NCBI GenBank assembly: GCA_013115145.1
Contig: JAAPAO010000055.1
Coordinates: 35,985 to 99,984 of the forward strand
Reading direction: 5' to 3'
DNA: 64,000 bases
Origin: Perkinsus chesapeaki ATCC PRA-425
Lineage: Eukaryota; Protista; Perkinsozoa
In this document: piece by piece, positions 41,445 through 54,923 of the stretch
Position numbering within the stretch: the stretch's first letter is position 1
Layout of the letters: every line of letters begins with the position of its first letter
The notes under the pieces: model-generated
Database searches by the model: none
The model's input: the letters and a program-made list of their open reading frames with translations, nothing else
What the model was told of the DNA's origin: nothing
Position numbers and translations under genes: made by a program

Positions 41445-43766
41445 TCAAAAGCCGCAGTCACCACAGTCGGTCCGCCCTGTCATCCATACCTGAAGAAAGG
41501 GTAATAACAGTGATGGTGTCGGGCGAGAAAGATACGCCTGAGGCGCGAATATTAGACTAGTGAATTCCCTCTTAAATGATGCTAATAATACCCAAAAATC
41601 GGTTGGAGCATTGTGAAACACGTTATGTATAATAAATCCCATATACAGTACGTACTATATGAAAATTTACTGTATGTTACTATAATAGAAATATATCACA
41701 TCACTCAGCAGCAGCAGCCTTTGCAATACAGTTGCGCCAATGACTATGCCAATACAGAAGGAGGTTCTATTGATGGTCACTTACCACTGCTGTGACACTT
41801 AAACCTGCACTCCCTACTCTGGGGTCCCCACACATATTGCTGGTGCATCCAAGCACAAAAGACGCATCGCTTGGATCAACTTGAGCGCCCGATGGCAGAA
41901 GTCCGAGAAAGGAGGCCAGCTGTAGGAACTCAGCGCCGTTGAGCTCTCTATTGCCATCGGCGTCATAAATGCGGAATGCATTAATGAATAGAGACTGGCA
42001 CGTTGGAGTGCACTCTCGGGATCGTCCACCGTCTATCCAGCCACGACATGCTGTTTGAAAAGTGAGATATAAAGGTTGTAGCGGACCGGTAACTTGACAC
42101 TCATCATTATTTGTAGTATTGGTGGTAGTAGTAAATACATCAAATCCACAGTCTACAATTCCATTCAACCAACTTGGGAAGTTACCCACATTGCATATCG
42201 GACTTCCTGTTAACATCAATGATTCTAATTTAGTCATCTGTCGTAATGAGTCAAATGGAAGCTCCTCTAATAATGACAGTTGAAAGTCAATCGTTCGCAG
42301 CATCGGATAGCGCAGGTGCATGTCAGCCGGGACGGAAGTTAGGCGAGACGGTCTAGCAGTGAGGACCTTCAATGCCGGCAGATGCCCTATGGTCAAGTTG
42401 TCTTTCAGTAAAGTGCTAAGTCGGAGGACTATAGCATTCTTATAACCGGACATGGTCTCTTGGATAACCTCATTCTCTGATTCACATTCCACAGTAGAGG
42501 TCGAGGTTGTCGTTACCCGAGCTGTAGTGAGGTATTCAATTCTTCTATACTTCCTAAGTTCCATCATATCGTCTATTGCACATTGTGATTGAATATCAAC
42601 AACTGCCATTCTGCAATCACATCTTGGTGAATCAAATAATGGATGTAACGGTATGAGACATTGTGTGTCAAATCCAGAAATCTCTTTGCTACAGTCGATG
42701 CCGTATAATCGATAAATAACGTAAGTGAACAGTGTGATAGCAAAGGTTATACAAGGTACCATTATTGAAGATGCTCGAACCTTCGAAACCTCAGTAAAGT
42801 TGCTTTGAGGGTATTTAGCCGCTAAGGCCAAATAACGGTCAATACTCAAAATGTGCATTAAAGAGAAAGCGGCTGGTAGAACGCTTGCCACAAAAGACAC
42901 GAAGGTGTCGTAGCGGAGGGAATACCAACTATTGGGCTTGGTAAATCTACCGGCTACTAGAAGTTGGCCGGTAGCGAATCCAAAGTCGACTAGAACTTCT
43001 AAAACGACAGACAGGATTCTTTCATTCTTGTAGAATAGAATCGGCGCAATAATCATATCAACAACTATCAAAGTTGTTTGAATGGTAATCTCCCGATTCC
43101 CAAGTGTCGTTTGAAAGCCTTCCGTGCCAAAGACATCTACGCCGCCCATCTCCAACAGATATAAGAACTGCACTGTGATATCAACAGTTTGCCACCAAAG
43201 GTATTTATACCAGAATAGGTCGCCTGTCATCCACGATCGTTTATATTGTCTTATCACGTTCTTGATGAAATTGCTCTCCAGAAGCAATGAACTTAGACGG
43301 CTCCGCCTATCTGAGGTCCAGCCCGTGGGTTTGATCCTGTAGCGAGATGTCAGAAATTTAAGCCTGAAAGCTTTCCATAAAAGCCTCAGAGCTTGCAGGA
43401 GAGCGACAGTACCAACAATACCGATAAAGATTGCACCAATAATATTATTAGTGGAGAAGTCATATCGAACATCTCGAGGGTTTATAGCAACCTCAGGTCG
43501 TAGAGCTGAGAGATCGGCCAGTGATGGTGGTACAGGTACGATAAGTTGGGCATAACATTGCATACCGCATACCACAGATAGGAGTATCTGAGCGAACAGA
43601 CGGAGCTTGACGGGCTACCGACGGTGAAGTGTAGGTTACTCACCAATAGCATGGCCATGACGGTGTAATAAACATGCCTATAATCTTTAACGAGGATGGC
43701 GGCGGCGTGAGACAATCGACGTGTAAAGGCTGATGTGCGCCGATTTGGCGCGACCTTCTCTGGAAC
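41445..43766 (-). CDS. 7TM-LRR-EF-hand protein, copy A
   Basis: Exons 43644-43766, 41785-43587 and 41445-41489. About 7 hydrophobic helices, Cys cap CLIPLHPLFDSPRCDC, LRRs (LRTIDFQLSLLEELP, LESLMLTGSPIC), EF-loop DADGNRELNGAE, terminal exon VWMTGRTDCGDCGF*. First exon/ATG not identified. Confidence 0.85.
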
Positions 43767-44630
43767 CTGAGTGGGCCGACAGACTACCACCAATAGTAAA
43801 ATCGACTGTAGAATGCCAACTAACGATAGCCAATATTGAGTATTGAACGCTATGGTGCCCTTACGACCAATATAATTCTCGGAGAGTTATCCCTCGGAAG
43901 TATGCAGGAAAATGCCGAAGAAAGGTAAGCGGAGCCAAAAGACTTCCTACAATTATTCACCAGAAGTGGTTTGAAAACAGCTATTTATACATAACGGGAA
44001 GACTGTGTGGTGAGATTATTACACAGCACCGATCAGAAACGCCAGTTATGATAATTATCATAAAATAGCAAAGATACTAGTTCCCGATAATAAAAACGGC
44101 AGTTCGATAAAAATCCGAAAGTGAGCCTCGATGAAAGAACGAAAAGCGAAGGGGATAGACAGGAAGGACGGAAATAGATGTCAAGGCAGGTTTGCGCAAC
44201 TATCGATGTAAATCGTGATATTTTCTGCCCACAACACACCATGCGGTAGAGAGCTTAACCGGTACGTGTGTTCTCAGAATGAACGAATTGTAAGGCTTCA
44301 AGCGGAGCGTATAGTGGAACAACGCGGTTCTACCACCGGCGAATCTACGGCGAACAACTCACGGAATGCGAGGCTTCAATCTCTGGTGCAATTCGGACGG
44401 GCATTATGGGAAGGGCGTCTCGCTTGTTGTTGTGATTGTGAGCTGTTGTGAGATGCGAGCAAGAGAACAGAAGCGGAAGCTGGTCAAGGATCCGTCAATA
44501 TGGGAAAGACACCGATCAGCACACGGTGCGCTACTCCTCCTCGGTGTCGCCGCGGGAAACGCAACTAGTTAAGCAAGCTCAACAACGGTAAATAGTGGTA
44601 GCATTAAATGAACATGTAAATAATGAAGGA

Positions 44631-52449: not shown

Positions 52450-52823
52450 CTCAGAATTTCAACAACAGACTAGGCGACAATGAGCCGATAACCGGCGACT
52501 CGAAATCCCTTTGATTGCCGTTATTACGGTCTACTATGTCCCACTCTGTTGACTCCAAGTGTCCATCTGGTTATATACGATGATATCTTATGCTTAGATG
52601 GCCAAAGTCGTTTTTTACTTCTGCGTTTCGACAGTGCCTTATGAAAATCAGAGGCGACAGTACATGTTGCTGAAGACCGTTGGGTGACGCTGTCCGGCAT
52701 TCTAGATGACAACATTAGATTGGGGCGGAATGGGCAGAATCGTTAGGGGACGTTTTTAGTGGCGCGCGCGAGTTTAACAGCGCAACATGCCAGTTGACGT
52801 CTCCAACGAAGAAGTCGAGGAAA

Positions 52824-54923
52824 ATGCCAGCTGATCCCCGAGTAAGCCCGCTTCTGTATGGGCGGCATTTTACCCTCAGAAACGAACTGGGCGCCCCTCG
52901 CAACTGGCAAGGGCCGCTAGTATAATAGTGACTAAATACAGCCGATCTTATCGAGCTGTACTTACAGTATTATTGGTAATAAGTATTATCGTCGTATCAC
53001 CTACTGTGTAGCATTATTCAGGCAATACTTATGCTGGTTTGTGTGATGCAATGCTATGGTCAATTCATAGTGCCTATGCCACCAACTCACGACGAGCTGG
53101 ATTCGCTCGCTCCGGATATGATAACAAATCCGCGCAAAGTCCGTTACACTGTCACCGCCGGCGGTATTCTCTCTGCGATAACCATTGGGCTTATTGCTAT
53201 CATTGCACTGGTGCATGCTATCCGATTGCTCCGTCAAATCATTGTTGAACCCAAGTATATGGTGGCCGTAGCACCGCTGCCTTCGGGCAATAAAGGGGAG
53301 TCTACCCAAACCGACCAGGGCGAAACTGAAGGGATCATGTCAACCACAAAGAAATTTTGGCGGTTCTATAAAAGATTTTGGATGGCCGGCGACCTATTTT
53401 GGTATCGGTATATATTCTGGCAAAGCGTTGACATACTAGTTCAAACCTTGAGGCTCTTCGAGAAGGGCGGATGGTCCATAGGAAACTCGACATTGCCTAC
53501 CGGTAGCCGGTCCGAGATCATGACCCAGGCAACGCTAATTACTCTTGATCTGTTACTAGCACCGATTACACTGATTCTGAACAACCGTGTATTGGCTGTG
53601 ATGCTTGAGGTTGTGATAGACTTTGGTTTTGCCGCTGGCCATCTTGTCGTTGCCGGTCGAATCACTAATCCCAACAGTTGGTACCCTCTACATTACCACA
53701 CTTTCGTGTCATTCCTTGCGAGCTTCATACCGACCGCGTATTCTCTGTTACATATTGTTGGCGTTGAGAACTACCTTGTGAATATTTCGAAACACCCGGA
53801 GCTGGCAGAGTCCGAAAAAATACCAGCTAAGAAGGCTGCCGTTCTATCCTGTTTAACTTGGCTTGCCGGCATAGGCCTTTACTCGTACACAATTAACCGA
53901 CAGTACGGCCACAACTGTAATTCGGAGATACCATTATTCGATGAAGAATGCAAGCTAGCAGTGTATCCGCTTGTCGGATCACCGGCGTGCGACTGCCGTA
54001 TGCTGGTGTTCTACAGTGGAGAGGGCTGCATTTACACCGACGTCGCAAGACTTGAAAAATACCATAGAGTTGAATATCTTACGGCTAACAAACACATTTC
54101 TCGTTCAGCATCTTACGTTTGTGAGAACGAGACCGAAATGGTAGAAAACACTATAAGTAGCTACAAGAATCTTATCGTTCTTGGTTATCATATGAAGACA
54201 AGTGACACGTTGGGCGTAAGATCCTTGCCTAAGCTCGAAGTCCTAATGATTCCCTTTATCAACGTGAGGTATTTACCCAATGACTTTCATATAAGGTTTC
54301 CAGAAATACGGGCTATTAAGCTAGAATCAAGTGACATTCTTGAACTACCGTATGAATCTTTAAAGCAGCTAAAGCACTTGGAATATGTATCACTGATGGG
54401 TACAGCAATCTGTCGAGATGAGAGTAGCCTGCCGGCTTGGACACAAGGTATATTTGACTGTGGTGATACATCTGGTGATTCTACCTTAACGGATGGCCGT
54501 TGTGTATTCACTGAGGCATACGTTAATAGTATACACCAATCCATAGCGGAATACTGTTCGAAATGGGACGAAGCAGCAAACCCTACGGACTGCCTTCCGA
54601 TTTGCACTGTGGTCTTTGCTTCACAATATCCCACATTTGACGCAGATTCAAGCACAACGCTCGACAACCAAGAGGTGGCGCAACTGCTTACGACTTTCGG
54701 ATACCTGCAACCCACTGACGTACTAGAGCCAGCCTTTATCGAGTGCATACTGGATTCGTGTTCGTATAATAGGACACTTGGTTATCTCCCACCGCAACTG
54801 GTTGCACTGGTAGGCATTTTCAAGATGCTTAATGATGTTGGCTTTGTTTAGGTTTACACTTTGGGTGACACAGACTGCAGTGACTGCGGCTTCAGCTTCT
54901 TTCAAGGTCACATGAACAATTAA
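52824..54923 (+). CDS. 7TM-LRR-EF-hand protein, divergent copy D (inverted)
   Basis: Complete model: exons 52824-52841 (MPADPR), 52880-52975, 53022-54809 and 54852-54923 (VYTLGDTDCSDCGFSFFQGHMNN*). Intron positions match copies A-C; EF-loop DADSSTTLDNQE. Confidence 0.87.

What the first reader, a model, noticed from the sequence alone, without database searches (positions are those of the whole stretch)
41445..54923. Tandem family of 7TM-LRR-EF-hand receptor-like proteins with probable inverted (N-in/C-out) topology
All four paralogs share, once spliced, a basic N-terminal segment and about 7 TM helices. These are followed by a Cys-rich cap (C..C.IPLHPLFDSP.CDC), several LRRs with a GSPIC C-cap, N-glycosylation sequons, and a canonical 12-residue EF-hand loop in every copy (DADGNRELNGAE, DTDGDQTINATE, DTDGDKAFSAVE, DADSSTTLDNQE). 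A CxxCGF tail ends each. The positive-inside rule and the disulfide-type caps suggest an extracellular LRR+EF-hand at the C-terminus, opposite to LRR-GPCRs. Multi-TM+LRR proteins are seen in oomycetes, but I do not know this architecture with an EF-hand. It is a candidate undescribed sensor or receptor system.
Basis: partly seen in the sequence, partly recalled or inferred. Interest (0 to 1): 0.82.

Follow-up and report, generated by a model that had tools for sequence, protein, structure and literature searches.

The report
Seven-helix membrane proteins with LRR ectodomain
Four neighbouring genes of the clam parasite Perkinsus chesapeaki encode an undescribed receptor-like membrane protein, with seven membrane helices followed by a probably outward-facing leucine-rich-repeat and calcium-binding module, that also occurs in dinoflagellates and resembles large unstudied protein families of oomycetes.

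Summary
The window (Perkinsus chesapeaki) carries four intact paralogs, three on the minus strand and one on the plus strand. Each has a large exon flanked by two GT-AG introns.

Each encodes:
- a basic segment before TM1 and seven helices;
- a Cys cap (C-x10-C-x12-CDC);
- about six LRRs with a GSPIC-type C-cap;
- a Cys-rich helical module with one EF-hand loop;
- a CxxC tail.

Support for N-in/C-out topology is indirect but consistent:
- K/R content alternates across all eight loops, family-wide.
- The C-terminal domain has a constant 16 cysteines in very divergent members.
- An AlphaFold model (pLDDT 81) shows seven membrane helices.

N-glycosylation sequons give no support.

The family is not confined to these four genes. 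Full-architecture relatives occur in three Perkinsus species, a dinoflagellate and environmental eukaryotes. Foldseek also links it to about 25 uncharacterised oomycete TM+LRR proteins.

The TM domain matches no Pfam family, solved structure or paper. LRRC8 and LRR-GPCRs share only the ingredients.

I read it as an undescribed surface sensor family whose signalling mechanism is unknown. Start codons, expression and topology are untested. The public annotation merges copies 1 and 2 with a neighbouring protease gene.

The parts
41445..43730 (-). Copy 1 (c1), spliced core. TM1 exon ends at 43644, large exon is 43587-41785, tail exon with stop is 41489-41445. The 5' limit is not determined.
   Evidence: ORF; GT-AG junctions; spliced translation has a single terminal stop.
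44631..46680 (-). Copy 2 (c2), spliced core. TM1 exon ends at 46594, large exon is 46537-44729, tail exon with stop is 44675-44631.
   Evidence: The tail ends in CSECGF.
47250..49284 (-). Copy 3 (c3), annotated as FOL47_008519 (P0001). TM1 exon ends at 49198, large exon is 49153-47348, tail exon with stop is 47294-47250.
   Evidence: P0001 is 100% identical. My spliced model from residue 9 onward is contained in P0001.
52889..54923 (+). Copy 4 (c4), annotated in part as FOL47_008520 (P0002). TM1 exon ends at 52975, large exon is 53022-54809, tail exon with stop is 54852-54923.
   Evidence: P0002 begins only after TM2.
48263..49153 (-). c3 membrane domain: second half of TM1 through TM7. Equivalent spans are c1 42694-43587, c2 45644-46537 and c4 53022-53915(+).
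   Evidence: Hydropathy. AF2 helices 2-45, 76-108, 153-175, 192-215, 218-240, 257-286 and 297-324. Charge alternation.
47702..48262 (-). c3 Cys-capped LRR domain: N-cap C-x10-C-x12-CDC, about six repeats, GSPIC C-cap. Equivalent spans are c1 42133-42693, c2 45083-45643 and c4 53916-54473(+).
47348..47701 (-). c3 Cys-rich helical module holding the EF-hand; it continues into the tail exon. Equivalent spans are c1 41785-42132, c2 44729-45082 and c4 54474-54809(+).
   Evidence: Alignment A5 has invariant C7, C19, C23, E46, C74, C105 and C108. The profile's listed PDB matches are all EF-hand proteins, aligned in register.
41929..41964 (-). EF loop of c1, DADGNRELNGAE.
   Evidence: Pfam EF-hand_1 E=0.009.
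44879..44914 (-). EF loop of c2, DTDGDQTINATE. It contains an N-A-T sequon.
   Evidence: Pfam EF-hand_1 E=0.024.
47498..47533 (-). EF loop of c3, DTDGDKAFSAVE.
54639..54674 (+). EF loop of c4, DADSSTTLDNQE.

Best explanation
What it is. The four genes encode members of an undescribed family of polytopic membrane sensors. The family is found in perkinsids, a dinoflagellate and environmental eukaryotes.

Topology. The chain starts in the cytosol with a basic segment. It crosses the membrane seven times. It ends outside the cell, or in the lumen of an organelle.

Ectodomain. This is a disulfide-stabilised domain of three parts: a Cys-capped block of about six LRRs, a Cys-rich helical module, and a CxxC tail. 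The helical module holds one Ca2+-binding EF-hand paired with a degenerate partner.

Inferred mechanism:
- The LRR surface binds an external ligand.
- The EF-hand is loaded with Ca2+ in sea water or haemolymph, so it acts mainly as a structural Ca2+ site.
- Binding is passed to the seven-helix bundle, which carries conserved buried polar residues. In P0001:56-700 numbering these are D/E164, Q168 and R171 in TM3; Q/H198 and D205 in TM4; E/D225 and D229 in TM5.
- The bundle then either opens an ion path or changes the basic cytosolic loop between TM2 and TM3.

Shown versus inferred. Shown: gene structure, architecture, conservation, purifying selection. Inferred: topology, Ca2+ binding, ligand binding, any signalling.
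For: - Four intact paralogs with GT-AG introns.
- dN/dS is below 1 in almost every region where dS can be measured, so the genes are under purifying selection.
- Full-architecture relatives occur in P. olseni, P. marinus, Dinoflagellata sp. MGD, an MMETSP transcript and metagenomic eukaryote contigs.
- K/R alternates over all eight loops, family-wide.
- Insertions of up to 118 residues occur only in the TM6-TM7 loop, which the model puts in the cytosol.
- Eight divergent full-length members have 16 Cys in the C-terminal domain, and Cys is enriched fourfold there.
- The AF2 model (pLDDT 81.3, pTM 0.77) shows seven helices. It also shows strands at residues 576-578 (loop positions 7-9) and 623-625, as in an EF-hand pair.
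- The C-terminal module profile's 60 listed PDB matches are all EF-hand proteins (calmodulin, calbindin, centrin), aligned in register.
- EF-hand Pfam hits recur at the same position in c1, c2, P0014 and P0028. UniRef names P0009 and P0165 'EF-hand domain-containing'.
- P0014 carries the Cys/EF module twice, so the module is autonomous.
- Conserved polar residues lie within TM3-TM5.
Against: - No topology predictor, transcript or experiment supports any of this. No RNA run holds the stretch.
- The third helix is weakly hydrophobic in the window copies (mean Kyte-Doolittle 0.30-0.38). If it did not span the membrane, the LRR would be cytosolic.
- Sequons are not enriched in the predicted outside parts: 0.47 against 1.17 per 100 residues.
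- EF-hands are mostly cytosolic. The window loops lack Gly6. Single-stretch E-values against EF-hands are only 0.1 to 1.
- The CxxC tail together with a C-x4-7-C pair could equally be a cytosolic zinc site.
- I could not inspect model coordinates for Cys-Cys distances or for the packing of helix 3.
- The family sequences used for charge counts are partly close paralogs.
Confidence: 0.6

Rival explanations
1. LRRC8-like arrangement. The membrane domain has an even number of spans because helix 3 lies on the membrane surface. The C-terminal LRR and EF-hand are cytosolic. The EF-hand senses cytosolic Ca2+, and the cysteines bind zinc. The protein would be a Ca2+-regulated channel or transporter.
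For: - Helix 3 is only marginally hydrophobic in the window copies.
- EF-hands are usually cytosolic.
- LRRC8 chains are the top Foldseek matches in PDB and Swiss-Prot, E about 5e-4.
- CxxC and C-x4-7-C spacings resemble zinc ribbons.
- Sequons are not enriched in the C-terminal domain.
Against: - The LRRC8 matches have TM-scores of 0.09-0.16 and rmsd near 38 A, so they share only the domain order.
- Both strongly basic loops, TM2-3 and TM6-7, can be cytosolic only if four spans lie between them.
- Helix 3 is clearly hydrophobic in distant relatives (1.15-1.34) and is modelled at pLDDT about 90.
- A constant 16 Cys, with LRRNT- and LRRCT-like caps starting a few residues after TM7, fits disulfides better.
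Confidence: 0.12
2. Surface adhesion or coat protein. The LRR ectodomain mediates binding to host cells or matrix. The seven-helix part is only an anchor with no signalling role.
For: - LRR ectodomains often mediate adhesion. Slit, SALM, internalins and Slitrk are among the fold matches.
- c1-c3 are a recent tandem expansion. The LRR blocks diverge (dS 0.6-0.8) while other blocks are homogenised.
- No orthologue of c1-c4 was retrieved from the other Perkinsus species.
Against: - The membrane domain is the best conserved part across the family. It has near-invariant polar and aromatic residues: Q168, R171, W249, P266.
- A single helix would be enough for an anchor.
- dN/dS in the variable LRR block is about 0.5, which is no sign of diversifying selection at this resolution.
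Confidence: 0.13
3. Same topology, but the protein resides in an internal compartment (ER, Golgi or vacuole). The LRR/EF module faces the lumen, and the protein works as a lumenal Ca2+ or cargo sensor or transporter.
For: - Lumen and outside are topologically equivalent, so all the topology evidence fits equally.
- An EF-hand could act as a real Ca2+ sensor in a store whose Ca2+ level varies.
Against: Nothing speaks directly against it. No sorting signal was examined, because the N-terminal exons are unknown.
Confidence: 0.15

Closest known systems
Uncharacterised oomycete multi-TM LRR proteins. Automatic names include 'LNR domain-containing protein', 'WLGC domain-containing protein' (PF26605) and 'Leucine-rich repeat domain, L domain-like'; examples are G4ZCU6, T0QB27 and A0A1V9ZHR5.
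   Same: - An N-terminal polytopic helical domain is followed directly by a C-terminal LRR domain.
- Foldseek gives E from 3.5e-9 to 4e-4 over model residues about 2-500. TM-score by hit reaches 0.52-0.57.
- They are the nearest language-model neighbours of copy 4, score 0.87.
- A Ca2+-binding, disulfide-rich module (LNR) sits where the EF module sits here.
   Different: - Identity is only 9-14%, and I could not test sequence-level homology.
- The distal module is LNR or WLGC, not an EF-hand.
- Pfam WLGC and Notch do not match the Perkinsus proteins.
- These proteins are themselves uncharacterised.
LRR-containing G-protein-coupled receptors (LGR4/5/6 and glycoprotein hormone receptors).
   Same: - An LRR ectodomain with Cys caps is joined to seven membrane helices.
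- LGR4 and LGR5 ectodomains are among the LRR fold matches.
   Different: - The order and topology are opposite: LRR N-terminal, N-out/C-in.
- Their 7TM is rhodopsin-family. Pfam 7tm_1 scores only E=0.17 here, and no GPCR appears among the fold matches.
- They have no EF-hand.
- Perkinsus marinus groups with the taxa whose GPCR signalling system is most simplified (PMC3971589).
LRRC8 / volume-regulated anion channel subunits.
   Same: - An N-terminal membrane domain is followed by C-terminal LRRs.
- They are the top Foldseek rows in PDB and Swiss-Prot.
   Different: - They have four pannexin-like helices, and 15-17 cytosolic LRRs without Cys caps.
- TM-scores are 0.09-0.16, so the fold is not shared.
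- They have no EF-hand.
Insect odorant and gustatory receptor superfamily (7TM ion channels).
   Same: Seven helices with an N-in/C-out topology. The family is known outside animals (PMC9998090, found).
   Different: - No fold or sequence match was seen in any search.
- They have no large C-terminal ectodomain.
Extracellular disulfide-bonded EF-hand pair of SPARC/BM-40. This comparison is from my own knowledge and was not tested here.
   Same: It is a precedent for a Ca2+-loaded EF-hand pair stabilised by disulfides outside the cell.
   Different: - It did not appear in the 60 rows shown for the profile search, which were calmodulin-like proteins.
- Its domain context is different.

Membership tests
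EF-hand (Pfam clan EF_hand) | A 12-residue loop with oxygen ligands at positions 1, 3, 5 and 9, and Glu or Asp at position 12. | tested here: met
   All four loops keep D1, D3, N/D/S5, N/S/D9 and E12. D1 is over 90% conserved and E12 is invariant across 12 divergent modules.
EF-hand (Pfam clan EF_hand) | Gly at loop position 6 and a hydrophobic residue at position 8. | tested here: inconclusive
   Position 8 is L, I, F, L. Position 6 is R, Q, K, T in the window copies. Relatives P0003, P0009, P0035 and the second module of P0014 do have Gly6.
EF-hand (Pfam clan EF_hand) | A significant match to an EF-hand profile. | tested here: inconclusive
   Pfam gives E of 0.009-0.06 for c1 and c2, and nothing for c3 and c4, all below the cut-offs. 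The family profile's listed PDB matches are all EF-hand proteins, in register. The best single stretch is i-E 0.11; the whole-sequence E of 1e-10 is inflated by repeated EF-hands in the targets.
EF-hand (Pfam clan EF_hand) | Helix-loop-helix paired with a second hand through a short beta bridge. | tested here: met
   AF2 gives helices 556-569 and 579-588 around the loop. Strand 576-578 has a second strand at 623-625, between helices 600-613 and 626-633. This rests on secondary structure only; coordinates were not inspected.
EF-hand (Pfam clan EF_hand) | Binds Ca2+. | not testable with these tools
   Needs ITC, a 45Ca overlay or a structure of the expressed module.
Leucine-rich repeat domain | Tandem LxxLxLxxNxL-type repeats that form a curved solenoid. 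| tested here: met
LRR-GPCR (LGR family) | Rhodopsin-family 7TM with an N-terminal LRR ectodomain (N-out). | tested here: not met
   The LRR is C-terminal. 7tm_1 scores E=0.17. The charge pattern gives N-in. No GPCR fold match was found.
LRRC8 / pannexin-like | Four-helix pannexin-like membrane domain with a cytosolic LRR. | tested here: not met
   Seven helices. TM-score is at most 0.16 to LRRC8 structures. The charge and Cys patterns place the LRR outside.
Oomycete TM+LRR (LNR/WLGC) proteins | Shared fold of the membrane domain plus the LRR. | tested here: inconclusive
   Foldseek probability is 1.00 and E reaches 3.5e-9, but TM-scores are 0.3-0.57 and identity is 9-14%. Pfam WLGC and Notch are not matched. 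A profile-profile test was not possible because the oomycete sequences could not be fetched.

The most novel reading that the evidence does not exclude
These genes belong to an ancient superfamily, shared by alveolates and oomycetes, of N-in/C-out seven-helix receptors. In it an outward LRR is coupled to interchangeable Ca2+-binding, disulfide-rich modules: an EF-hand pair in perkinsids and dinoflagellates, LNR or WLGC in oomycetes. The helix bundle signals without G proteins, for example as a ligand-gated ion path. That would be a third kind of seven-helix receptor, beside GPCRs and the insect-type 7TM channels.
Probability: 0.25. Interest if true: 0.8.

Novelty: new variant of a known kind. 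Interest (0 to 1): 0.56.

Why it matters
Very few surface receptors are known in perkinsids, dinoflagellates or oomycetes, and classical GPCR signalling is reduced in Perkinsus (PMC3971589). This is a conserved, multi-copy family that combines a ligand-binding LRR, a Ca2+ site and a novel seven-helix core. It is a concrete candidate for how these parasites and algae sense host or environment.

The predicted topology is the mirror image of LRR-GPCRs. The membrane domain has no relative in Pfam or the PDB, so a structure or a localisation experiment would be informative either way.

The work also corrects the public gene models. Copies 1 and 2 are fused with a protease gene, copy 4 is truncated, and copy 3 borrows distant exons.

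Tried and rejected
- First AlphaFold run, with 7 Perkinsus sequences: pLDDT 37.8, unusable. Adding distant relatives fixed it.
- The search for homologous proteins with the family alignment and with P0009: swamped by LRR words. It returned only Perkinsus proteins and generic LRR proteins.
- Mid-length hits of the profile search, checked for oomycete kin: they were animal or bacterial LRR proteins.
- My reading by eye of TIR-like and cyclase-like domains in the N-terminal extensions of P0032 and P0035: no Pfam support, so dropped.
- The weak DUF6720 hit on copy 1 (E=0.1): not reproduced in any other member, so treated as chance.
- Membrane domain alone against PDB sequences (best E 0.28, K2P channels), Pfam and the ESM Atlas: nothing credible.
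- Whole-model fold searches (PDB by VIA, ESM Atlas, Swiss-Prot): dominated by the LRR.
- RNA evidence: the two listed RNA runs hold none of the stretch.
- Paper searches for Perkinsus, oomycete, LNR, WLGC, GPCR-bigram and 7TM with C-terminal LRR: no description of this architecture.
- N-glycosylation sequons as topology evidence: rejected.

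
Full report
**Origin and observation**

The window is from Perkinsus chesapeaki. Copy 3 is 100% identical to the NCBI protein FOL47_008519 (P0001), and copy 4 corresponds to FOL47_008520 (P0002).

Four long ORFs lie at 41767-43575(-), 44579-46525(-), 47237-49135(-) and 53031-54851(+). They align over their whole length, with 79%, 76% and 38% identity to copy 1. 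tblastn with P0001 and with a distant paralog finds exactly these four copies in the window.

**Gene models**

Each copy has the same structure:
- a short upstream exon that encodes a basic segment and the first half of TM1;
- a GT-AG intron of 44-56 bp;
- one large exon of 596-603 codons;
- a second GT-AG intron, 295 bp in copy 1 and 42-53 bp in the others;
- a tail exon of 14 codons (23 in copy 4).

The basic segments read RRTSAFTRRLSH, RTSRLSRRLS, RCSRVSQRLS and KRTGRPSQLARAAS. The tails end in C-x-x-C-G-F.

The spliced copy 3 is contained in P0001. The finding's end points, 41445 and 54923, are the stop codons of copies 1 and 4.

None of the TM1 exons contains an ATG, so the true first exons remain unknown. 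No RNA run holds the stretch, so I made no read-based check.

**Domain content**

- Pfam gives only sub-threshold LRR_8 and EF-hand hits on the window copies.
- LRR_8 reaches 26.8 bits in the P. olseni relative P0004 and 30.7 bits in P0159, against a cut-off of 27.
- Weak EF-hand hits recur at the homologous position in c1, c2, P0014 and P0028.
- UniRef names the paralog P0009 and its P. marinus orthologue 'EF-hand domain-containing protein'.
- The membrane domain matches no Pfam family in any of 15 members, no PDB sequence and no ESM Atlas cluster.

**Family range**

I searched 1.84 billion representatives with a profile of the Perkinsus sequences. Besides a mass of generic LRR hits, it found proteins matching from the membrane domain through the EF module:
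- further paralogs in P. chesapeaki, P. olseni and P. marinus;
- a 1258-residue protein of Dinoflagellata sp. MGD;
- an MMETSP transcript;
- several proteins from metagenomic eukaryote contigs.

At about 20% identity these keep the same order of parts:
- the FW...Q.IR...GG helix;
- the W-Y-x-L-R loop;
- C-x10-C-x-x-x-HP-x6-CDCR directly after the last helix;
- LRRs and an NP-x-C cap;
- a C-x(10-12)-C-x3-C helix;
- the D-x-D/N loop ending in E;
- two more Cys;
- a final C-x-x-C.

P0014 carries the Cys/EF module twice, so it is an autonomous module.

In a maximum-likelihood tree c1-c3 form one clade, with c4 apart. Together they group with the clade of P0003 (another P. chesapeaki paralog) at 98/99 support. 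No P. olseni or P. marinus orthologue of c1-c4 was retrieved.

**EF-hand**

All four loops keep ligands at positions 1, 3, 5, 9 and 12, and a hydrophobic residue at position 8. All lack Gly6; several relatives have it.

A profile of twelve divergent C-terminal modules was searched against all PDB sequences. All 60 listed matches are EF-hand proteins, aligned helix-loop-helix in register. The whole-sequence E of 1e-10 is inflated by repeated hands in the targets. The best single stretch has i-E 0.11. I therefore treat this as consistent support rather than proof.

In the AlphaFold model the loop's positions 7-9 form a strand (576-578). A second strand (623-625) lies between two further helices. 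This is the pattern of an EF-hand pair whose second hand is degenerate.

**Topology**

Hydropathy gives six clear helices and one marginal helix, residues 151-172. The marginal helix decides between C-out and C-in. Three lines favour seven spans with N-in/C-out.

1. Charge pattern. Across 20 family sequences the K/R fraction of successive loops alternates without exception: 0.14, 0.07, 0.18, 0.09, 0.32, 0.11, 0.17, 0.07. The two strongly basic loops are TM2-3 and TM6-7, and TM6-7 is also the only loop that tolerates long insertions. Both can be cytosolic only if four spans lie between them.
2. Helix 3. It is clearly hydrophobic in distant relatives (1.15-1.34). It is modelled as a helix at pLDDT about 90 in a model with mean pLDDT 81.3 and pTM 0.77.
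3. Cysteines. The C-terminal domain has exactly 16 Cys in eight divergent full-length members. Cys is 4.1% in the predicted outside parts against 1.1% in the predicted cytosolic loops. The first Cys cap starts a few residues after TM7.

Sequons are not enriched outside, at 0.47 against 1.17 per 100 residues, and one conserved sequon lies in a predicted cytosolic loop.

I could not run a dedicated topology predictor or inspect model coordinates.

**Comparison with known systems**

- Foldseek against PDB and Swiss-Prot puts LRRC8 channels first. Their TM-scores are 0.09-0.16 and rmsd is about 38 A, so only the domain order is shared. All other matches are plain LRR domains.
- Against AlphaFold DB clusters the model finds itself and the P. 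marinus relative C5LHG3. It also finds a 1020-residue 'EF-hand domain-containing protein' (A0A0G4EIT3) aligned over the full length, with TM-score by query 0.53.
- The same search then lists about 25 proteins (E 3.5e-9 to 4e-4), aligned over the membrane domain plus LRR. I recognise their accessions as oomycete, from memory; the tool shows no organism. Some are named 'LNR domain-containing' or 'Leucine-rich repeat domain'.
- The ESM Atlas feature search independently put oomycete LNR, WLGC and LRR clusters nearest.
- These oomycete families are uncharacterised. I found no paper describing them or the Perkinsus family.
- LRR-GPCRs have the opposite order and topology and a rhodopsin-type bundle, which is not matched here.
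- P. marinus is among the taxa with the most simplified GPCR system (PMC3971589).

**Evolution of the array**

Between c1, c2 and c3, synonymous divergence is mosaic:
- 0.00-0.13 in TM3-TM7 and in the N- and C-caps;
- up to 0.6-0.8, or saturated, in the variable LRR block, the linker and the EF module (c1 against c2 or c3);
- c2 and c3 differ much less, with dS 0.18-0.37 in those blocks.

This indicates gene conversion of some blocks. dN/dS is below 1 in almost every region where dS can be measured. The exception is the C-cap block, where only three or four differences were counted. All four genes are therefore under purifying selection. At this resolution there is no evidence of diversifying selection on the LRR.

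**Mechanism and verdict**

The best-supported reading (about 0.6) is a surface or lumen-facing sensor. Its parts would be an outward Cys-stabilised LRR that binds a ligand, a structural Ca2+ site in an EF-hand pair, and a novel seven-helix core. The core's conserved buried polar residues relay the signal or conduct ions.

Rivals:
- an LRRC8-like cytosolic LRR/EF arrangement (0.12);
- a pure adhesion protein (0.13);
- the same topology in an internal compartment (0.15).

The kind of thing, an LRR-ectodomain membrane receptor, is known. This architecture, its topology and its membrane domain are not described. I rate it a new variant of a known kind, of moderate to good interest.

**Annotation note**

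In the public assembly the gene calls differ from my models (window coordinate = 62189 minus locus coordinate):
- Copies 2 and 1 and the downstream peptidase C1 gene form one 1782-residue model, window 46608-38105.
- Copy 4 starts only at 53259, after TM2.
- Copy 3 takes its first two exons from 52188-51833, about 2.5-3 kb upstream.

The conserved CxxC tail followed by a stop, as in all relatives, argues that copies 1 and 2 are separate genes.

Noticed in passing
window 38105-46608 (-), equal to L001:15581-24084: The public annotation merges copy 2, copy 1 and the downstream peptidase C1 (cathepsin-like) gene into one 1782-residue model. Each copy ends with its own conserved CxxCGF tail and stop codon, so the merge is probably an artefact. 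It also affects how the neighbouring cathepsin finding should be read.
   Followed up: partly
window 51833-52188 (-) and 53022-53259 (+): The annotated copy 3 (P0001) takes its first 61 residues from two exons 2.5-3 kb upstream that have no counterpart before the other copies. The annotated copy 4 (P0002) starts after TM2. The true first exons of all four genes are unknown, because no TM1 exon contains an ATG.
   Followed up: partly
window 41785-49153 (-), large exons of c1-c3: Synonymous divergence between the three tandem copies is mosaic. It is 0.00-0.13 in TM3-TM7 and both LRR caps, but reaches 0.6 to saturated in the variable LRR block and the EF module when c1 is compared with c2 or c3 (c2 against c3: 0.18-0.37). 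This fits block-wise gene conversion.
   Followed up: yes
window 44879-44914 (-): The EF loop of copy 2 (DTDGDQTINATE) contains an N-A-T sequon at loop positions 9-11. If the domain is extracellular and the site is glycosylated, that could interfere with Ca2+ binding.
   Followed up: no
P0014 residues 519-640 and 660-787; P0164: A metagenomic relative carries the Cys/EF module twice in tandem. The P. olseni orthologue of paralog P0009 is annotated with an added rhodanese domain (PF00581), which may be a fusion or another merged gene model.
   Followed up: no
window about 61135-62188 and 57772-58762: Neighbouring gene calls are a product with an Integrase_H2C2 domain, probably a retroelement fragment, and a weak acetyltransferase (Acetyltransf_1) hit.
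   Followed up: no
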